This document shows, piece after piece, positions 17,196 to 41,033 of a DNA stretch of 64,000 nucleotides; the first letter of the stretch is position 1, and the number at the start of each line of letters is the position of its first letter. Both the position numbers and the translations under genes were made by a program. The notes beneath the pieces were generated by a model. It was not told the origin of the DNA. It worked only from the letters and a program-made list of their open reading frames with translations, and made no database searches. Source of the stretch: Dimorphilus gyrociliatus (lineage: Eukaryota; Animalia; Annelida). Where the stretch lies: NCBI GenBank assembly GCA_904063045.1, contig CAJFCJ010000006.1:2284946-2348945 (forward strand). The letters run 5' to 3'.

Positions 17196-18798
17196 ATGGC
17201 TCTTCAAGAAGATGATGAAAAGAAGCTTTCGGAAATCTTTGATATTGTATATAAGAACTATATTTTTTGTGAAACCACAAATGAATCCAGTTCCAGTGTA
17301 ATTGTTCAGGTTAATTAAATTTTATTCAATAAGATTTTAAATATTACATTGCTCTATCTTCTATCTTTTTAGAAAAAAGTCAAAGAATCATTTGAAATAT
17401 GTGAAAAATTAGTCGCTATGGTAAATTCTTTGGAATTATTTAGCAAAAATGAACGTCTTGAAGAGATTTCAACTTCTGATATCAAGTTTGTCATTTTTTG
17501 AAATTAGTAATAGTATTGAAAAGATTTAAATATTGAAATAATTTATTCTTTAGAATGATGATGTTACCGGCTTTTATGGGCTATTATAGAGGAAAAGTAA
17601 CAAAAGATGACCGAATGAGCGTTTTGAAAGAATCTCAGGTTTTTAAATTTTCTTCTCTTTTACTTGATATCACTTTTTTCAATTTTAGATTTTCTTTATT
17701 GATTTTCTCAAATTGGCAAAACTTTATGGAATTGCAAGCATTGATTTGCCAAATGTTGGAGAGGAAAACGTTAGGTATGAAAAACAATACTCCACATGCA
17801 AAAAACTAAAACTACTAATAAATTCTGTATTCAATCTTTCAGTGAATTAGAAAATTCTAAAACACAAACGGAAAATTTGGTAGAAATGTCAAATATAAGA
17901 GCAAAAAAGATTGAAAGGCATAGGGAGAAAGTTAAGTTAAAAGAAAAACTTAACGAGTTACGATCAGCCATTGATAAGCCCAGCGCTGATGAAGAAATTG
18001 TTGTACGTAGCAATGACAATTTGAAACATACTAATAGATTGAATATTATACGAATATCATTTTTCTTTCAATTCTGACTTTAGAGAGATTTTTATATAAC
18101 TCAATTAAAAGAATGGGTTTCTTTATCATATGAAGAATTAGATAATATTGATAGTAAGTATTTTGTTTGAATTATCTTATACAGAATTATTATCATCCCT
18201 TATTCGATTAACAGGAGAGTTAGAAATTTTTAACTTCATGAAGAATAGATCAGCCTCCGACTCCTCCGAAGTGGGAACGAAGCCAAAAGAGCAACCAGTA
18301 AATTACATTATCACTATTCATATACAATAGCTTTCATTTGTACTTTTGTCTGCTTTTAGAAAAAACCTTTGAGACCCTTTATATTAACCAAATCTGCCGT
18401 TCAAGCAGCTGTTTTTGGAGCAGGATATCCTAGTTTACCTACTTACACCTTAGAAGAGTTTTATGAAGAGCAATTTGCAAATGGCAACGTTCCTCCTGCT
18501 AAGTATATATGTTATAAGCAGCTTTCATAGGTTCTTCTAATTCTCTTTCATTTAAAGTCCGACTCTGCTAAAAATGTCTGCTGAGGAAAGGGAAGCTTTG
18601 GAACAAGAAGAGCGAGATAAATCCGAAGTTGAGAAAGAGCAAAAACTTGAAAAAGACGATGAAGAGGCTGTACAACATTCCAGAGAGTGGGACGATTATA
18701 AAGATGGTTTGTTTGAAAAATTTTATTTTCATTTTCGTAACCAACTGCTTCTTTTAGAACACCGAACCGGATGGGGAAATACCCAGAACAGGGGATAA
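17196..18798 (+). CDS. IGBP1: Immunoglobulin-binding protein 1 / alpha4 / TAP42 (PP2A regulator)
   Basis: LELFSKNERLEEISTSDIK, IRAKKIERHREK, VFGAGYPSLPTYTLEEFYE and the C-terminal REWDDYKDEHRTGWGNTQNRG. Confidence 0.95.
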
Positions 18799-19089
18799 GA
18801 AATCATTTGTCTGATAAACTTTTGTTTACTTGTAAACTCTTTAAGATACATTTTACGTTTAATTACAATAAAACACGACTTATGCTAAATATAAAAGATA
18901 CTTTTTCATGTAAATTCAAGTTCATGTCATCTTGAAAATATACAAGCAAATAAACATACAATCCCGCTCAAATATATGGTTTAAAATTTATATTCAATTT
19001 ACAAAATGTAAGAAACAAGATATATTCCATGATGATACCTGAACCGTTTGAAATATCATTTATTAACAAAGTATCTATTAACCAATGAA

Positions 19090-20527
19090 TTAATTCCAAT
19101 TTGGGGGAGGAGGAGGAGGGCGATTAGATGGAGGAGGTGGAGGTGGAGGAGCCCCACTAGGCGGCGGCGGCGGCGGTGGCCCAGGAGTTGGTGGTCCCAT
19201 TGGAGGCATATTTTGTGGAATTCCTGGTCTTGGAGGACCTGAAACAGAATGTATATACAGCAACAGTACAAGTGTATAAATTAATGTCTTACCTGGTGGG
19301 GGATATGGTGACATCCCGTGGGGAGGTGGTCCAGGAGGAGGCATAGAGGGAGGAATAGGTGGTGGTGGTGGCCTCTGAAAGTGTCCTTGTTGCCGAACGA
19401 AATTTGATGGGGGAACTGGAGGAGGAGGGGGACGATGCATGTTTCCACCTCCTGGCATTGGAGGTGGAGGTGGTTGGAAATTTGCTGGTGGCATTGGAGG
19501 AGGGGGAGGTGTGTTCATAGGCATCATTGGAGGCATTGGGCTTGGGGGTATTGGTGGAGCATCAGCGAACAGTTGATGAGGTCTATCAGCTTGTGACAGT
19601 GGGTTTTGAGCTGCCAATAGACGTTCAGCCGCTGATCCGTGTCTTTCTCCCTTTGAATCCTTCTTGAAAGCGTACGAAATAGTAATCGCTCTGAAACAGA
19701 ATAATAATTACATTTTTTCTGAAGTGATCTACAGATTACTAGTGTACCTGTTGCATAGATATTGTCCATTCATTGCCTCAATAGCAGCATCAGAGGCATC
19801 AAAGTTAGCATAATTTATAAAAGCGAAACCTTTTGAGTTCCCTGTGTCTGGATCTCTCATAATTTTCGGAGTTTGTAATATCACTCCAAAAGCACTGAAT
19901 GTATCGTATAACAACTTTTCATCAACTTCTGGATCAAGATTTCCAATAAATATATTTGCTCCAACATCTAAATTCTTTTGATGGGCTGAAGCCTATTCAG
20001 TAGACATAAATATAAGATAATACTGAACATATTACGATTTTTTTACACTAACCTTATTTACACGTATAGGCTTCCCATACAACTTTATCATGTTCATAAT
20101 TTTTATAGCATAATCTGCATCTTCTTCACCCAAAAACTCTACAAAGCCATAACCTTGATGGTTCATGGATATGCGATCCTTAGGCATGTGAACGTTCACT
20201 GTAAATGTAAACTATTTAGTGGAGGAATATAAATTTGGTTGTCAACTTACCAACGGGACCTCCTTGCAGGAAAAGTTCCCATAAAATTGACTCTGACACT
20301 TTCTCATCAAGACCACCGACATAGACGGTTGCGTCTGAAATACGTAAAATTTACCAAATATCACTCAATCAAATAATTTTCAAATAGATTTCTCAGAGTT
20401 CGACATATTACAATGCAATAGATAGGCTACTTTTTGTAAAATAATTTAATGATACTGCTAACTAAAAATTACAGCTTGAGTATGTCTATTTACCTTGATT
20501 TCTCTCGGCTATCGGACCGGCAGCCAT
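19090..20527 (-). CDS. SF3B4: Splicing factor 3B subunit 4 (SAP49)
   Basis: [48 protein letters not shown], two RRMs, and a proline-rich C-terminus. Confidence 0.97.
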
Positions 20528-21132
20528 TTTATGTCGATCTGAAAGCGATAGCTGAAGCCGACAACTATACTATATACGAGCACGAAACTATTACCCAATT
20601 TTTTGCGATGTCCATAAATCACTTTGAGAACCAATTACGGGGCTTTTTCTTAAAGTAAAGTTATCATATTTATCAGTTAGCTCCTTGAATAAGTTAAACA
20701 TTTTTTACAACAGTAATCTAATTTTTAATTCAAATTAAATTTATAAGAAGCTATTTGATATCTCTCAAGATTAGCTTTTTACATAAACTTTATTAATGAA
20801 TAATTTGATCCCTTACTAAATAAAGTGGCTTTTTCAATCGTTATGAGAAAATAGACTTGCAATATAATCCAAGATAACAATGTAATTTTAATTCTTTTTC
20901 TGTCGATGTTACAAAATAATTTTAAAAACACCAACAAAAATGTAATTTTTCAAGACAAACAAACTACTGTGAGTAGTTTGAAAATATCATTGATAACAAA
21001 CTAATAAAGTCTATTAATAATTAGGGTTTAAAAAATTTCAACTCTTATTATACTATTTCTCTGCAAAACAGTCAAGGACAAGGACGATAACGAAATAAGA
21101 ACATTTCTTGGATATTGAAAAAAAACTAAATA

Positions 21133-29210: not shown

Positions 29211-31047
29211 CTAGAGAGAACAGAATTTTCCGCGAGATGTCGCTTTCAAACTCTTTTCTCAATGAATAAAGTATGAACAAGGCATATATTCTTCAATTAA
29301 AGTCGTAATTAAACTTCAAAAGCATATTAATTAAACAAATATAAAGAAACTGCTCAATTAGCTTTGAAATATAGATGTCCAAAAACAAGTTTCCCAACGA
29401 CATTACACTTAAAATTTTATTTTTAGATGCTTTATCTATAAAAACATTATTATCGAGATTCTATAGAGCAAATCTAATAATCAATTATTAAGATATAGCT
29501 GACATGAAGAGGACCGCCAAAAATAAAGGAAAAAGTCTACTTTTATAGAGGATAAAAAGTATATTTTATGTCTTCTATATACAGAACTAGTCATTGTACA
29601 ATGAAAAAAAAAACATCAAGGCACAATAGAGCATTTTCATCTTTAGAATATATTGAAGATATACGGTGATATTCATCTTCTACGATTAGATGATATGTTT
29701 TATGACATTCAACGACATAAGTATATTCAGATTGACTGACAATAACAAAATAATGATACTATAAGCCTATCATATATATAATAATAATAAAAAAGAACAA
29801 ATTATATTTAATCTGATTGGTTAAGATTTCAAAGTAAATATCTTTAGAATAAATAAATTGGATAATAAGTAAATAGTCTATTTATCAAAACTATAAAATT
29901 GCTTCTCAACCCTTCAATTGCTATCTCTTTTGTATTAAAGATAATGATATTATTGAGCAAAATTATAGCTTAATGTATTAAACACCATTATTAAGATAAA
30001 ATGTACAAAACATCGATGCAAACAGTCATATTGATGCTAAATTCGTAAAATCAATAGTGTATATGGCAATTAGTACATAAAAAAAATACTTACGATGACA
30101 AGTGCAGTAAAGCACACGTTACGTTTTTGACAATTGAATTAATCAACGTGATTAGGGATTATGAGTCCAATCTGCCTATATAATGTATTTATTTGTATAC
30201 GAATCATCCTACTATATTAATAATTTTTTTAACAAATACATAAATCTTATTGGTATAATATTTCATTTGAGTAATCTGTTCAGTTTATAGATGAAATCTA
30301 TCCCATCTCCAACCTCTTTTCGCTCTCCTATGTAATTTTATATATACAACACAATGTAAAGAAGTCGTAGACTGTTTCTTTTCTTGGATTAGTAGAGCGG
30401 TAAACTTTTCAAAGTGTTTCTTTGGAATAATCCTTTTACACAATCATCGTTTTTTAGTCTACTTTTACGACTCAGTAGAAATGTATTCACTAAAAGTAAT
30501 TTTTGATTTGATTTTACACCAATAGATGGCATTACTATCTCTATATAATATTTCAATGGAAAGTTACGTTTTAAACAATCTTACATCGTTAAATATTGTA
30601 TGAAATTTCTTTTACCAGCTCTTTTGAGCACAATAGAATAGTACTATAAATATTTTAAAATAATAATGCGACGTAGAGTAAATTAAGAAACTATAAAATG
30701 TAGTTTTTTTAAGGAGACACATTTGTAAACAAGTATGTGACCCAATTTGGCGCCAAAAATTATACACAAAATAACTATAGACTTTTTGCACTATATACCT
30801 AATAAACGAGATGAAACTTTAAAAATATTCCATAGCAAAATCAAATTCAATTTTAACAACCAAGAGAAATTTAACATATTTGTACAAGAACTATTTTATA
30901 TATGTATAAAATGGGCGTAGGAATATCAGAGCCTTTCGCACGTGAGCGACATCAAAGTGAGAGATTCTATAGTCATCAGTGTTGAAATTTGAAATCAACG
31001 TTATCTCATTCTTATCAGTCATCAGCCGTATTATTATCCGTAGAGAG

Positions 31048-32783: not shown

Positions 32784-34063
32784 TTAGTCCTGGGAGAAAA
32801 GCGTTTCATCCCGCTTTTCCAGAGACGTTAATTCCTCACTCACTAAATTTCCTCGGATTTTGATACGACAGCAACAACACTGAATCAAAGATAATATAGC
32901 AAAATTTTAGTTAGATACACAATTGTTTCCAAATTTGGTAGCTTACATACCTTTTTAACTAAACAACCAAAGACAATGGTGGTTATGAAACATATTAGCT
33001 GCCATTTAATGGATAAATGAATATACGCATTATTATTGAAATAATACAAGATTTAAATATTTTTAATACCTCTAATCCAGATATGACACAGACATAAAGA
33101 AAGAAGATAATCATGTAATTTGATTTTTGTGGAAAGAAAAGTTCTGCACACTCTCTTCTGTAATAAGTAACTCCTTTGAATATTTCACATTTATTTCGAT
33201 CATTTTCCATTTCTTTGGGACACAAACAAGATCTTGCAACTGATTTGTTATGTTCAATTTTGTATTTATAATCAAACTGACAGCATTCATACTAAAAAGA
33301 AGTTGTTGGACATTTTGAAATGTGTTAACTGTCTATATTATTCTTTACTTACATTCTTTTGTATTTTATCTAGGCTTTCTTTTATTTCCTTGTCTGTAAA
33401 ATAATCAGCGTTACGTAGATTCTCTTTAACCGATAATTCCAAATTGTAACTGAAATGTGATGAAAAAAGACTACAAAAGAGTTGAGCACAGCATGCCAAG
33501 ATTATAAATGTAGAAAACTGGTAAATTGAATATAATTTTCCATAAACACTAATGATTTATTAAAATAATATACTAACTATTGTTATCAGGCAACAATTTT
33601 CTTTATAAATACAAACAAAACCAAAAATACCAATGAATAAGAAAATGACTCCATGACTGAGGTACCAATTGAGAACTCTATTAACATTTTCAGTGGTAAA
33701 CGCTACTTTATACTTGTGCATTCCAACTCTTATCAGAGGAGTGGCAATTAAAAATCCAATTCCGGATATCTACACAGATAATAAGTATTTCATTTAAGTT
33801 TTTCTTTCTTTACTTCATTTTTAAATGAGTAATTTTTCGTTTATTTGTTCTATTTTGGGAATTAAATTTCCATGAAAAGTTCACTGACTCGGTAATAAAG
33901 GTATAGTAAAGATTTTCAAAGATTATTCAAATAGAGAAATTTAAGTATAGTATGTCATTCTTTTAAAAAACTCAGGAATAAAGTTGTATAGTTTACTTAC
34001 AATAAACAATAGACATAAGGCTTGTGAAGTATATTTGACGCTTTTTTTCCCTCTATCTATCAT
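32784..34063 (-). CDS. Divergent tetraspanin B (CD63-derived; CCQ instead of CCG)
   Basis: MIDRGKKSVKYTSQALCLLFI (63 nt) | ISGIGFLIATP...GFVCIYKENCCLITI (192 nt) | ... | YECCQFD...RSCLCPK...KC...EC | ... | CCCCRIKIRG...FSQD*. Intron positions match tetraspanin A. Confidence 0.78.
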
Positions 34064-36089: not shown

Positions 36090-39000
36090 ATGGTAGAAGG
36101 AGGAATGAAATGTGTCAAATATCTCTTATTTACCTTCAACTTACTTTTTTTCGTAAGTATAAAAATGATAATCGACCAGTATATGTCGAGTAGTTTGCCT
36201 GACCTATTTTGTTTTCCAATGTAGTTCTATGTTTTATATAAAGTCTTAATACGTTTTCTATTATAATTTATATTTAGATAATTTGATGAAATAGGATCTA
36301 TTATATAGAAGGAAAATGATGAAATTATTTAGCATTGTTTTCCGCAACATATTGTTGGTTGGACTAGTGTGTATTCTGAATACACTAACGGTCATATGAT
36401 AGTATGCAATTTGAAACCCATATTAACCAATGGCTGACGGGTACGCACTACAACACCATGCATGTACCAGTGTAGCTATACGCTGTTCATGATATAAATA
36501 GAATTTTTTTTCGTACATGTACATAAAATATTTTTGTCTATTATATTCAAACCACTATGGTTAAAAATAACCAAATATAACAGGTTATCCAAAAGCAGTG
36601 AATTGAACATTGAATTCCGGTTTGTCAATAAATTTATCCGTTGCAGATGTTAAATTGAATTAACTTCAATTTTTAAATAAAAGTTGGATTATAGGGTGTG
36701 AAAAAAAAAAAACTGCAAAAAGGCCAAACATAACCTAACTATGTCATCATATTTTTTTATCTTTATGTTGAGTGTTTTTTTTAATAATAAGAAAAAGAAA
36801 CGTGCTAAACTACAAATATACGTAAAGAGGAAGATAGAGCAAGAGAGAGAGAGAGAGGGAGAGAAATATATACATGAATAGATTTAATAACAATCGTGTT
36901 TTATGGATAAAGGACAAGATACATTATACATTTAGAACTTGGAACGGAAAATGTTTTTTATATCATTGTTGTATTAACAAACAGCGTCTTTAGTTGTTTC
37001 TTGACGTCATGTCCGCCTAAATGGCAGGCACTCACCCCCTTTCCACACCAACTAGTCTGAACCCCCTGGACATATTTAGTCTACAGTATAATAGTGTCTG
37101 GTGTGGTTTTTTTTTCTCACCCCTGCTCTTCTCTATCTATCAATCTTTTCTTTTTTGACTTATCTATAGTTAGCTCGTGTATCTTTGAAAAAAAGCGATT
37201 GTTACCGAGGAATTAAATTTAATATTTGGCTTAGTTTAGTTTAAAATTTCACATACATATTCTATACAAGACGATAAGGATCATCGAACCATGACTATTA
37301 ATAATAATTTCCATATTGTATTCTATTTTTAAACTGCATTAACATTTTCGTCAAATATTCTTTAAATCGCTTTTGAACATTGTCTAAAGAAAACAAAAAT
37401 CACGAACGTATGACTATTGGGGTAAAATAATCTAAAAGTTGGAATTTATGATGAATCACGAAGATTAATCAATTTAATACTTGTTGTCTGCGCTAAACAC
37501 TTCAGTGAACGAAAGGAAACTGGTTCGGTTAGCCTCATAAAGAACATAACATTTCATATATTGATAGTCTCTTTCCGTTGATTTTTAGGTTATATAGGCT
37601 GCACATGGTCTTTTTTTAGACTACTCCCGTCTTTTTCTCTCAACACACACGCATGTAGATAAACATATTTTTACATATAGTATATATACACACTTACATA
37701 CTTGCTCTGAAATGGTTGGCATGGATTAAGGATAAGATAGATGGATTTCTTCACTCTATCATACAGCTTCTATTATATGGATAGATAGATAGGAGCAAAA
37801 GGGTGTGGAGAGTGTATCATATGTGTAAGTTTGGAGAGAGAGAGCGAGAGAAAGGAAGAAGGAAGCAGAAAAAAAAACAAACAAAACAAATAACCAATTG
37901 AAAATAGAAAGGAAGAAAAATCTGTTAAAATTAAAAAACAGCATTTTTACTTCTCTTTTTATTCTAATTTTTTTTTCAGTAATTTATTGATTAAAACAAT
38001 TTTTTTCCGGATGTGATAAAAAATAAACGACATATGGGGATTTTTAGTTTATCCATATTCATCATGTTTGTAATTAATTATAATTACAAAAGAATTGGAA
38101 AAATTTCGCCAATAAAGCAGATTTAACTACATAATTATTTAATTAATAAGCTGCTTGTTGTTTGATAAAATTTCATTAATTATATAATATTTCATTATTT
38201 ATAACAGCACCATTTGGTTAGTTTTACTCGAGTAAAACGTATCGATTTTCGTTTAGGTTTCAAATATTTTTTTATTCGAAGAGAAATGATAGTGGCACCA
38301 TCTAGCTTTAACTTTTTTTTGCTATACGTTGTTTATAGGCTGAGAGAAGCTAACTTTAGTTAGCAATCTTAAAATAACATATCCCATAGGAAAATACTTT
38401 TAAAATGTTTGTAAATTTGATAAATGGTTATTGATATGTTTTGTAAATAAACAAAACAACAATTTGGAGAAAAATTATATTAATATTAATATTCAATAAG
38501 GGAAGAGAACTAAATGAATTATAGATAAACAATTCTTTTTTCGAAGATAAATTATGAAAGTAGATGCGATCTAAAGAACAAAAGCTATATTGATTTCGTT
38601 CTCTGTACGCTTACACCATGTTTTTGCAAGTGCTGTATGTTTTCTTTATCCAGTCCTAGGGTTTATTCTCTTCCAAAGAAATTCCAATTAAGATTACAGA
38701 ATGTGTTGAAAAATTCAGAGTACGTCTGTATTACTAAGGGAATACATCGTGTAGTATGAAAGTTGTTGAAATACCGCTAAGCCAACGAGCTTTTTTCTGT
38801 GTGAGACATGATTTTATTCTTCATAATTATCTTTTTGACCAAGTATATTTGCATAACCACCATATTGAATACAATCATATCAATTTTTATCCCTCATTCT
38901 TTTCTTTTCAGTTTGCCGGACTTGCTCTCATAATTGCAGGAGCCGTTGTACAAACCAGATTTCGTGAATATATCGCATTTTTTGGTAATAATTTCTCTGC

Positions 39001-41033
39001 GGCCGCAATTGTTTTAATAGTTGTTGGAGGCATCATCCTCCTCATCGGCTTTTTCGGATGTTGCGGTGCCTACAAAGAAAGCTACTGCATGACAATGACA
39101 GTAAATATATTTAAAATTTCTTTCCATTTAATAGAAAGAATAAATGATGACTTTTTTTTTCTAGTTTGCTGTTATACTCGGACTTATTTTCGTCTTGGAA
39201 ATTGCTGTTGGAATTGGCGCTGCTGTGATGAAAAATAAGGTTCGAAAGATTATTGAAGATAAAATGACCGAGTCAATGAAGAACTATAATGATGATCACG
39301 AGGGTGTTAAGAAAGCTTGGGATAGTATGCAAGAGAAGGTTAGTAAATTATTGGATTAATTACAATTTTAAAACAAACTGATTACGTTTAGTTCGAATGT
39401 TGCGGTGTGAAAAATTCTACTGATTGGAACACAACTGTTCCCGATTCTTGTGACTGTCCTGCGGATAAGAAGACGGATGAAAAAATATGTCATAAGGAGG
39501 ATGGCAAAGATATCTTCAAAAGAGGATGTATCGATGGAATTTCGGAATGGGTTGAAAAGAACGTCGTAGTTGTTGTTGGAGTTGGTATCGGATTTGCTTT
39601 CTTGCAGGTACGCATTAGAATCTTTTTTATCTTTTCTTCGTTTCAAAATCTCTTTTCTCTTTTCTTTTTTACCTTTTCAATTAATCAATCAAAAAAAAAA
39701 AACACCATTTCGAAATATTCAAATAACTTTGTAAAACGAGCAGCTTTTCGGAATCTATGCTGCCAAAAAATTGGCTGATGCAATTTTGAAGGGTTATCAC
39801 AGTGTTTGAAGGTAGAGAAAACGCTTTTCAACCCCCTCCTTTCCCTATTCAATATATTTTTCAAACTTTAAGTTGATTAAACAATGATGTATTGTATTAA
39901 TACTCTCTATATAAAAAAAACAAAGAATTAGTCATTATACCTATAGATGCAAAAGAATTTTTGGGTGCATATATTTTGTGTTAATAATGGCTTGGGATAG
40001 GAGAAGAGGTGTGCTTTAAACTGTTGCTTAACCTGTTCTCGTATATAACAATTGGTTTCATTCTAAACATAAAAGCTTTTAGCATTCAAAAAAAAAAACA
40101 AAATGAATAGAAACGAAAAGGTAAAAGTTTTTAGAGAGTTTTTCTGTAAACCCAAATTTTATATACATTTACAATGCTATTTACAATACTATTAAGCCTC
40201 ATTTTCTGATTTCTCTTGAATGATACCAAATTACAGACAGTACAATAAAAACGCATAAAAAAAATTCCTATCCTATTTCAATTTTCGATCGTCTTTTCAT
40301 TCGTGTTTTCAATCGAATATCAATATCTTAACTTTCATTGTCCTGCGAATATTTTTTTGGATAAAAAAGAAAATGAATCTTATATATTTTAATAAATTTT
40401 TCCATACAAAAAAAGACTTTTGCCTTTATTATCCTTCTTTTCTTTCAATTATAATCTAACCCCTTTACAACAGATTATTGGAATATTTATTACGTGCTGT
40501 TTATTGAGAGAATACGATATGTAAAATAGCAAAAACTAAATTTAAAAAAAAAATAAACAAATAATTGAATCCAACATTAAAAAGAAACAAATATGGTAAT
40601 AAATAAATTGATTATAATAATTAAGGAATGGAGAAAAGATGCTATAGATAGATATAGTTGTATCTATTTATAGTTTTTTTTTATTTTTTTATTTTTTTCT
40701 AGAAAAAAAAAGAGCAATAGAAGAGTTTCTCTCAAATATTCCTTTTCTTTTTATCTGTTTGCTAAAAAGTCTATTCTTTTCTTTTTATTGTTTTGAAAAG
40801 GGTTCGCACAAAAATTTATAGGAAGATAACTGTATATATATATATATATATATACATATATATATACACAGTTTGTCCATATTTGGTGGAGCTAAATTTT
40901 TAATGAATTATCATTAATTGAATTGAACTAATTAATTTATTTTTTGTTGTTTTTTTCTTTTACACAGTTGATTGGTATCGCTTTCGCTTGCTGCTTAGCC
41001 AGGACCATTAAAAAGGAATACGAAGTCGTCTAA
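36090..41033 (+). CDS. CD63: CD63-like tetraspanin with two alternative terminal exons
   Basis: Exons 36090-36152, 38912-39100, 39165-39338 and 39392-39607, then either 39744-39809 or 40968-41033. Contains MVEGGMKCVKYLLFTFN, GFFGCCGAYKESYC, FECCG, PDSC and C-terminal YxxPhi tails. Confidence 0.9.
36842..36864. repeat. GA-rich simple repeat in CD63 intron 1
   Basis: agagagagagagagagggagaga; a second GA-rich tract lies at ~37833-37862. Confidence 0.85.
37002..37009. promoter_or_regulatory. Perfect CRE palindrome TGACGTCA in CD63 intron 1
   Basis: Exact 8-mer within a locally GC-richer patch. Confidence 0.35.
40833..40866. repeat. (TA)n microsatellite in the intron before the distal CD63 terminal exon
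   Basis: tatatata... run with one interruption, about 100 nt before the acceptor at 40967. Confidence 0.9.

What the first reader, a model, noticed from the sequence alone, without database searches (positions are those of the whole stretch)
39744..41033. CD63 has two duplicated 66-nt alternative last exons that switch palmitoylation and the sorting signal
After exon 4 (…FAFLQ|gtacgc at 39608) there are two phase-0 exons of identical length, each with its own stop. Exon A (39744-39809) encodes LFGIYAAKKLADAILKGYHSV*; exon B (40968-41033) encodes LIGIAFACCLARTIKKEYEVV*. B keeps the juxtamembrane CC palmitoylation site but has E before Y. A replaces CC with KK but has the GYxxPhi form typical of lysosomal/AP-3 sorting (human CD63 GYEVM). 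A has a weak proximal acceptor with a distant pyrimidine tract (~39620-39680), as regulated exons often do. One gene could thus make differently trafficked CD63 isoforms (lysosome/exosome vs surface microdomain). I know of no described tail-swap of this kind for CD63.
Basis: partly seen in the sequence, partly recalled or inferred. Interest (0 to 1): 0.78.

Follow-up and report, generated by a model that had tools for sequence, protein, structure and literature searches.

The report
Alternative tail exons in annelid CD63
A CD63-like membrane-organiser gene of the tiny marine worm Dimorphilus gyrociliatus has three tandem copies of its last coding exon. Two of them are already in the public annotation as isoforms that differ only in the last 21 residues, so this is a real but only moderately new case of a known splicing trick.

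Summary
Downstream of exon 4 (donor at 39608) lie exon A (39744-39809) and exon B (40968-41033). Both are 21 codons plus a stop, phase 0, and homologous far beyond chance.

- **Species and annotation:** the window is Dimorphilus gyrociliatus. Both products are already public: CAD5115797.1 carries tail B and CAD5115798.1 carries tail A. That annotation builds its splice variants from PASA transcript assemblies.
- **Tail B:** it is the near-invariant protostome CD63-like tail (ACCLARxIKKEYEVV).
- **Tail A:** it is a strongly diverged copy (KK for CC, GYHSV). No other protein in the searched collection has a tail like it.
- **Third copy:** It is not annotated.
- **Other species:** the Capitella and Owenia orthologues also carry two copies of this exon. 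Lottia, Crassostrea, Lineus and Limulus carry one.
- **Mechanism hint:** in an unidentified species, transcripts show the extra copy used as a 95-nt stop-containing cassette, as with KRAS 4A/4B. Exon A is followed by a donor-like AAG|GTAGAG and may work the same way.

The proposed differences in palmitoylation and sorting are untested, and both tails end in YxxPhi. I found no paper describing this.

The parts
36090..36152 (+). Exon 1 (ATG, MVEGGMKCVKYLLFTFNLLFF), donor gtaagt at 36153
   Evidence: Read. Identical to residues 1-21 of P0141/P0205.
38912..39100 (+). Exon 2 (TM1 end, small loop, TM2), phase 0
   Evidence: Pfam Tetraspanin 47.6 bits.
39165..39338 (+). Exon 3 (TM3 and the start of the large extracellular loop), phase 0
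   Evidence: Pfam Tetraspanin 34 bits.
39392..39607 (+). Exon 4 (CCG motif, rest of the large loop, first half of TM4, ends ...GFAFLQ). Its donor gtacgc at 39608 is the only donor that feeds the alternative exons.
   Evidence: Pfam Tetraspanin 56.6 bits.
39620..39680 (+). Pyrimidine-rich stretch in the 136-nt intron before exon A, about 65-125 nt upstream of its acceptor
   Evidence: Read. The acceptor-proximal 20 nt of A are only 7/20 pyrimidines.
39744..39809 (+). Exon A: second half of TM4 plus tail LFGIYAAKKLADAILKGYHSV*. It has no juxtamembrane Cys and ends in GYHSV. It is annotated as isoform DgyrCDS4739 / CAD5115798.1.
39812..39817 (+). Donor-like GTAGAG, 2 nt after the stop of A (context AAG|GTAGAG). 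If it is used, A is a 68-nt stop-containing cassette (39744-39811) rather than a last exon.
   Evidence: by analogy with the cassette shown. Use of this site is not shown.
40474..40524 (+). It keeps CC, has a 5-residue deletion relative to B, and ends Y-D-M, so it lacks a full YxxPhi. It is not in the public annotation.
   Evidence: Acceptor 12/20 pyrimidines.
40968..41033 (+). Exon B: canonical tail LIGIAFACCLARTIKKEYEVV*. It is annotated as isoform DgyrCDS4740 / CAD5115797.1 and has the strongest acceptor (16/20 pyrimidines).
39876..39881 (+). ATTAAA, 67 nt after the stop of A. It is a possible poly(A) signal if A is a true last exon. Further AATAAA sites lie at 40552 (28 nt after the stop of C) and 41384 (about 350 nt after the stop of B).
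   Evidence: Such hexamers occur about 2 per kb in this AT-rich window, so this is weak evidence.

Best explanation
The CD63-like tetraspanin gene of Dimorphilus gyrociliatus (36090-41033, + strand) carries three tandem, homologous copies of its final coding exon, which encodes the second half of TM4 plus the cytoplasmic tail. All three lie behind a single exon-4 donor. Alternative splicing joins exon 4 either to the distal copy B or to the proximal copy A. B gives the canonical, conserved tail with two juxtamembrane cysteines and ...KEYEVV. A gives a 235-aa protein with the same 214-residue body and a diverged tail with KK instead of CC and ...GYHSV. Each copy carries its own stop. Whichever copy is spliced directly to exon 4 sets the C-terminus, and anything downstream becomes 3' UTR. 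This is the KRAS 4A/4B type of homologous terminal-exon substitution. Shown: the copies, their homology, both isoforms in the public annotation, and the same duplication in two other annelids. Also shown: cassette-type use of such a copy in transcripts of one other, unidentified species. Inferred: that A and B are both truly spliced in vivo in Dimorphilus (annotation-based); whether A is a cassette or a true last exon; that C is used at all; and that the swap changes palmitoylation and trafficking.
For: Searches give the exon structure, with all exons in phase 0. Searches show that the homology of A and C to B is far above the window's background. Searches show that P0141 (CAD5115797.1, tail B) and P0205 (CAD5115798.1, tail A) are both D. 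gyrociliatus entries, identical over residues 1-214 and matching the window exon by exon. [quoted passage not shown] A precisely spliced 39607^39744 model therefore most likely rests on an assembled transcript. One search shows two copies of the last exon in the orthologous loci: Capitella L002 at 20012-20077 and 20693-20758, and Owenia L003 at 30564-30629 and 33461-33526. Searches compare transcript contig L012 with L013/L015 in another species. They are nucleotide-identical except for a 95-nt insert exactly at the exon-4 junction. The insert encodes a homologous 21-aa tail plus a stop and is followed by the canonical last exon. One search shows donor-like sites directly after the stops of Dgyr A (AAG|GTAGAG) and the Capitella proximal copy (AAG|GTAATT). 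A keeps exact length, phase, stop position, a hydrophobic TM half and a C-terminal YxxPhi, although it is only 44% identical to B in nucleotides. That pattern argues for constraint.
Against: Junction use, isoform ratios and 3' ends in Dimorphilus are therefore unverified. The closest relatives' assembled transcripts all carry a B-type tail (P0133 at 89% identity, P0145 and P0151 at 81-82%). A search scored on the A tail found no A-like tail in any other protein of the 5.8-billion collection. A may therefore be lineage-specific and minor. A has the weakest acceptor. Exon C has no annotation support.
Confidence: 0.72

Rival explanations
1. Exon A is a decaying or neutrally drifting duplicate. 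It is spliced only at noise level, or entered the annotation through one rare assembled transcript, and B is the only functional tail.
For: Only B-type tails appear in the transcript contigs of close relatives. No A-like tail was found elsewhere. A has the weakest acceptor. A has lost the two cysteines that are almost invariant in more than 100 orthologues.
Against: A keeps an open frame of exactly 21 codons, the stop at the homologous position, the phase-0 AG, the LxGI start of the TM half and Y-x-x-V at the very end, despite near-saturated nucleotide divergence. It is a distinct CDS in an annotation whose variants derive from PASA transcripts. Tail-swapped transcripts exist in another species.
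Confidence: 0.2
2. A, and possibly C, are true alternative last exons. Each would have its own cleavage and polyadenylation site, and the choice would be made by competition between splicing and polyadenylation.
For: ATTAAA lies 67 nt after the stop of A, and AATAAA lies 28 nt after the stop of C. The donor-like site after A (GTAGAG) departs from consensus at positions +4 to +6.
Against: Such hexamers occur about 2 per kb by chance in this window. In the one case where transcripts could be read (L012 against L013/L015), the extra copy is an internal cassette followed by the canonical last exon. The Capitella proximal copy is followed by a near-consensus donor.
Confidence: 0.4
3. The similarity of A and C to B is coincidental ORF noise in AT-rich intron DNA.
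For: The exons are short (16-21 codons), and A is only 44% identical to B in nucleotides.
Against: A and C are clear outliers among all AG-preceded short terminal ORFs of the window: 28 against 8, and 35 against 19. Both lie on the correct strand in the 1.36-kb interval after exon 4. A is an annotated isoform.
Confidence: 0.02

Closest known systems
KRAS exons 4A/4B (homologous alternative terminal coding exons)
   Same: Two homologous copies of the last coding exon sit behind one donor, each with its own stop. The isoforms share the whole body and differ only in the membrane-proximal C-terminal targeting segment. One version carries a palmitoylatable cysteine and the other relies on lysines (PMC9882654). 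From my own knowledge, 4A behaves as a stop-containing exon upstream of 4B, which matches the cassette seen.
   Different: It is a different protein family: a peripheral lipid-anchored GTPase rather than a four-pass membrane protein. Here the swapped exon also encodes half of a transmembrane helix. Use and function in Dimorphilus are not experimentally shown.
Tandem duplicated exon substitution events (mutually exclusive homologous exons)
   Same: Tandem exon duplication with equal length and phase, producing isoforms identical except for a homologous segment (PMC8373072 and PMC9741552, listed).
   Different: Classic cases are internal exons that need a mechanism to enforce exclusivity. Here each copy ends in a stop, so the protein products are exclusive even if two copies sit in one mRNA.
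Vertebrate CD63 (TSPAN30) C-terminal GYEVM signal
   Same: It has the same overall architecture: a CCG tetraspanin, juxtamembrane CC in TM4, and YxxPhi at the extreme C-terminus. Vertebrate CD63 sequences ending ...ACCLVKSIRSGYEVM were among the hits to exon 4. Tail A shares the Gly before the Tyr.
   Different: The human tetraspanin isoforms surveyed in PMC6773723 are deletion or truncation variants, and no homologous tail swap is listed for CD63. Strict orthology of the worm gene to CD63 was not tested by phylogeny.
CD63-like orthologues of Capitella teleta and Owenia fusiformis
   Same: Each locus has two tandem copies of the same 21-codon terminal exon after the ...GLAFVQ exon.
   Different: In those species both copies keep the canonical features (CC or VC, KEY[EQ]VV). 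Only the Dimorphilus copy A has lost both cysteines and changed the residues around the Tyr. No second isoform of these two species is in the protein collection, since each falls in a single-member cluster.

Membership tests
Tetraspanin family (Pfam PF00335) | Profile match above the curated threshold | tested here: met
   Exons 2, 3 and 4 were searched separately and score 47.6, 34.0 and 56.6 bits against a cut-off of 32.1.
Tetraspanin family (Pfam PF00335) | CCG motif and further conserved cysteines in the large extracellular loop; four hydrophobic segments | tested here: met
   FECCGV and PDSCDC are in exon 4, and hydrophobic stretches are in exons 1-2, 2, 3 and 4 plus the tail exon. CCG, P-x-S-C and G-C columns are invariant in alignment A2.
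CD63-like subgroup | Closest named relatives are CD63 or CD63-like; juxtamembrane CC and C-terminal YxxPhi | tested here: met
   Most named hits are 'CD63 antigen(-like)'. Tail B matches the consensus ACCLARxIKKEYEVV. The names are source annotations, not tests.
CD63-like subgroup | Orthology to vertebrate CD63 shown by phylogeny | not tested
   No tree was built. Fly relatives of the same cluster are variously named CD63, CD151, Tsp47F and 23 kDa integral membrane protein.
Homologous alternative terminal exons (KRAS 4A/4B type) | Tandem copies of equal length and phase, homologous beyond chance, each with its own stop | tested here: met
   A and B are each 66 nt and phase 0, with stops at the same codon. 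Their homology is an outlier against the window background. C is a shorter third copy.
Homologous alternative terminal exons (KRAS 4A/4B type) | Both versions present in mature mRNA of the same organism | tested here: inconclusive
   Both isoforms are public CDS entries, and the annotation derives variants from PASA transcripts. This was shown directly only for another species.
Homologous alternative terminal exons (KRAS 4A/4B type) | Conservation of the duplicated arrangement across species | tested here: met
   Capitella and Owenia have two copies. Lottia, Crassostrea virginica, Lineus and Limulus have one. The A-type sequence itself was found nowhere else.
YxxPhi adaptor-binding sorting signal | Tyr, two residues, then a bulky hydrophobic residue in a short cytosolic tail | tested here: met
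   A ends YHSV and B ends YEVV, both at the extreme C-terminus. C ends YDM, which is one residue short. This is a sequence pattern only.
YxxPhi adaptor-binding sorting signal | Binding to AP-2 or AP-3 mu subunits, and the resulting localisation | not testable with these tools
   Needs binding and localisation experiments.
Juxtamembrane S-palmitoylation of tetraspanins | Cysteines at the cytosolic end of TM4 | tested here: met
   CC is present in B and C and replaced by KK in A. Actual acylation is not testable here.

The most novel reading that the evidence does not exclude
Annelid CD63-like genes carry an old, conserved tail-switch built from tandem copies of the last coding exon, used as stop-containing cassettes. 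In Dimorphilus it has grown into a three-way switch. B would be palmitoylatable with a full YxxPhi. C would be palmitoylatable with a truncated signal. A would be non-palmitoylatable, basic, and carry a GYxxPhi signal. One tetraspanin would then be sent to different membrane domains or vesicle populations. This would be an undescribed way of regulating a core exosome and lysosome tetraspanin.
Probability: 0.2. Interest if true: 0.65.

Novelty: new member of a known kind. Interest (0 to 1): 0.45.

Why it matters
CD63-type tetraspanins organise endosomal, lysosomal and exosomal membranes. Their short C-terminal tail and juxtamembrane cysteines are the parts thought to control trafficking and microdomain assembly.

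A natural isoform pair that keeps the whole protein constant and changes only those 21 residues is a ready-made experiment on what the tail does. It could be tested in a small, culturable annelid with a compact genome. The same exon is duplicated in Capitella and Owenia, and a tail-swapped transcript pair exists in another species, so this may be a recurrent feature of lophotrochozoan CD63-like genes that has not been described.

It is not a new mechanism: homologous alternative terminal exons are well known from KRAS 4A/4B. The two Dimorphilus isoforms are also already in public databases.

Tried and rejected
- **RNA reads:** No junction or 3'-end evidence could be obtained.
- **Word search with exon 4 alone:** nothing found, because the length filter excludes full-length proteins.
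- **Exhaustive HMMER search with exon 4:** only relatives at 50% identity or less, but it supplied full-length homologues for the next step.
- **Search scored on the A tail (P0205 residues 190-235):** it returned only the four B-type dinophilid proteins, so no A-like tail exists elsewhere in that collection.
- **Degenerate DNA pattern for the end of exon 4 in metagenome contigs:** no match. I did not use the second scan, because the contig of P0145, which should match, is evidently not in that collection.
- **The look-up of encoding contigs for P0205:** not on record, as expected when only one product per gene is stored.
- **Bacterial promoter/terminator scan:** irrelevant to a eukaryotic gene.
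- **Supplementary files of the genome paper:** nothing on CD63, tetraspanins or their isoforms.
- **Literature searches:** no description of a tetraspanin or CD63 tail swap by duplicated last exons.
- **Orthology among the copies:** an identity matrix of the 21-residue tails gives only hints. The proximal Capitella copy resembles the cassette of the unidentified species (14/21), and the distal copies resemble each other (18/21). The sequences are too short for a tree, so I make no claim.
- **Joined exons:** Exons were searched one by one by reference. Full-length comparisons used only database proteins returned by the tools (P0141, P0205).

Full report
**What is there.** The region is a five-exon, all-phase-0 tetraspanin gene on the + strand.
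- Exon 1 is 36090-36152, exon 2 is 38912-39100, exon 3 is 39165-39338 and exon 4 is 39392-39607.
- Exons 2-4 were searched one by one by reference. Each matches Pfam Tetraspanin above the curated cut-off.
- Exon 4 ends ...GFAFLQ in the middle of TM4 and is followed by gtacgc.
Exon C (40474-40524) reads IIGIFITCCLLREYDM* and sits behind a pyrimidine-rich acceptor ending in cag.

**More than chance.**
- I listed every AG-preceded ORF of 12-30 codons that ends in a stop, on both strands of the 64-kb window. There are 2129.
- Scored on the first 11 residues against B, C reaches 35 and the next candidate 19.
- Among the 115 candidates of exactly 21 codons, A scores 28 against B and the next scores 8.
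- A is also the best match to B in an unrestricted six-frame scan, with 10/21 identities.
- At the nucleotide level A and B are only 29/66 identical. The duplication is therefore old or fast-evolving.
- Even so, A has kept its length, phase, stop position, the L-x-G-I start of the helix half and Y-x-x-V at the very end.

**Identity and public status.**
- The exhaustive search with exon 4 gave only distant relatives, but it supplied full-length CD63-like proteins.
- A profile of six of those proteins (A1) found DgyrCDS4740 of Dimorphilus gyrociliatus (P0141, CAD5115797.1, 235 aa). It equals the window's exons 1-4 plus B.
- Its 90% cluster holds one more member: DgyrCDS4739 (P0205, CAD5115798.1, 235 aa). 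It is identical for 214 residues and ends with tail A.
- The window is therefore D. gyrociliatus, as an earlier scan note had said, and both isoforms are already in the public annotation.
- The genome paper states that PASA transcript assemblies were weighted 10 against 1 for ab initio models. [quoted passage not shown]
- From this I infer that both the 39607^39744 and the 39607^40968 junctions were seen in assembled transcripts.
- Exon C is not represented in the cluster.
Full-length work used only P0141 and P0205 as returned by the tools.

**What the tails are.**
- Tail B is the canonical one. More than a hundred protostome CD63-like proteins from annelids, molluscs, nemerteans and horseshoe crabs end in ...ACCLAR.I[KR]KEYEVV with very little variation.
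- 'E before Y' is therefore the ancestral state and not a peculiarity of B.
- Both A (YHSV) and B (YEVV) end in a YxxPhi pattern at the same position.
- A really differs in three ways: it has lost both juxtamembrane cysteines (KK), it has a different and more basic linker (KKLADAILKG), and it has Gly at Y-1 as in vertebrate CD63 (GYEVM).
- C keeps CC but has a five-residue deletion and ends Y-D-M, one residue short of YxxPhi.
- A search scored only on the C-terminal 46 residues of P0205 returned just the four B-type dinophilid proteins.
- The assembled transcripts of the closest relatives all carry B-type tails (P0133 at 89% identity, P0145 and P0151 at 81-82%).
- B is therefore the major, conserved form, and A is a lineage-specific, probably minor one.

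**Other species.**
- I fetched orthologous loci and scanned them with tblastn and with a pattern for AG-preceded terminal exons.
- Capitella teleta has two copies. L002 20012-20077 reads VLGVIISCCLGKSIRKEYEVV* and is the annotated one. L002 20693-20758 reads ILGIILAVCLGRSIKKEYEVV*.
- Owenia fusiformis also has two. L003 30564-30629 reads LIGVVLACCLAKTIKKEYQVV*. L003 33461-33526 reads VLGIILACCLGRTIKKEYEVV* and is the annotated one.
- Lottia, Crassostrea virginica, Lineus longissimus and Limulus each have one copy.
- The duplication is therefore shared by three distant annelids among the loci sampled. In Capitella and Owenia both copies remain canonical.

**How such a copy is used.**
- One 90% cluster from an unidentified animal (55% identical to the worm protein) holds two proteins. 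They are identical over the 218 residues before the tail and differ in 10 of the last 21 (P0124 against P0215).
- Their transcript contigs (L012 against L013/L015) are nucleotide-identical except for a 95-nt insert exactly at the exon-4 junction.
- The insert does not begin with GT, so it is not a retained intron. It encodes IFGVIITCCFGQAIRKEYETV plus a stop.
- It is followed by the complete canonical last exon, which thereby becomes 3' UTR.
- In that species the duplicated tail exon is therefore a stop-containing cassette, not a last exon with its own poly(A) site.
- In Dimorphilus the stop of A is followed after 2 nt by AAG|GTAGAG. In Capitella the stop of the proximal copy is followed after 6 nt by AAG|GTAATT. 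Both fit the cassette mode.
- Poly(A)-signal-like hexamers also follow A and C, but at a density no higher than the window's background.
- I put cassette against true last exon for A at roughly 55:40.
- The acceptor of A is the weakest (7/20 pyrimidines, against 12/20 for C and 16/20 for B). It is close to that of constitutive exon 4 (9/20) behind a 53-nt intron, so weakness alone does not mark it as regulated.

**Mechanism.** Exon 4's single donor is joined to one of the tandem copies, and the first copy included sets the C-terminus because it carries a stop.
- Shown: the copies, their homology, the two annotated isoforms, the duplication in other annelids, and cassette use in one other species.
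- Inferred: real use of A in vivo (about 0.8), any use of C (about 0.3), and a functional consequence.
- The most defensible functional prediction is loss of TM4 juxtamembrane palmitoylation in A. That should weaken tetraspanin-web association.
- A shift in adaptor preference because of the Gly at Y-1 and the longer spacer is possible but speculative.

**Comparison with the known.**
- The closest analogue is KRAS 4A/4B. There, homologous alternative terminal coding exons exchange a palmitoylated cysteine for a lysine-based membrane signal (PMC9882654).
- More generally this belongs with tandem duplicated exon substitutions (PMC8373072 and PMC9741552, listed).
- The survey of human and mouse tetraspanin isoforms reports deletions and truncations, not a homologous tail swap (PMC6773723).
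- The tetraspanin intron study does not mention duplicated terminal exons (PMC2650405).
- None of my searches found a description of this for CD63 or any tetraspanin.
- Earlier notes of this scan report a second tetraspanin with duplicated last exons and a three-way alternative exon in another tetraspanin, both in this genome. They also report three alternative last exons in AP-1 sigma just beyond this window. I did not test those.

**Verdict.** This is a new, undescribed member of a known kind of alternative splicing. Its two products are already database entries and its function is untested, so interest is moderate.

Noticed in passing
L002:18532-19106 (Capitella teleta KB294061.1): The Capitella CD63-like orthologue has three tandem homologous copies of the exon that encodes the first helices of the large extracellular loop (18532-18633, 18764-18907, 19002-19106). 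They look like mutually exclusive exons, and only one is in the annotated protein.
   Followed up: no
L007:28753-28830 and L007:29754-29804 (Limulus polyphemus KI894264.1): The TM3 exon of the Limulus CD63-like gene has a second, partial homologous copy about 1 kb downstream.
   Followed up: no
P0181 vs P0253 (marine metatranscriptome ERR1712038): Two 258-aa CD63-like proteins from one sample are identical except for two blocks: the TM3 segment (residues about 115-133) and four tail residues. This is the pattern expected from alternative homologous exons at two positions.
   Followed up: partly
window:31460-32400 (+) and window:34063-33140 (-): Two diverged tetraspanin paralogues (CCE and CCQ instead of CCG) lie tail to tail inside intron 1 of the CD63-like gene. 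The + copy splits its TM4/tail region with an extra intron and ends ...CFCCRRNHMTLKM*. Neither shows duplicated tail exons.
   Followed up: partly
L002:22421-26694 (-) and L005:24369-30317 (-): In both Capitella and Crassostrea virginica an ARMC5-like armadillo-repeat gene follows the CD63-like gene on the opposite strand, which suggests conserved synteny. I did not check whether the gene at about 42.5-43.1 kb (-) of the window is its counterpart.
   Followed up: no
window:40810-40870: An (AT)n/(TA)n microsatellite lies in the intron between exon C and exon B.
   Followed up: no
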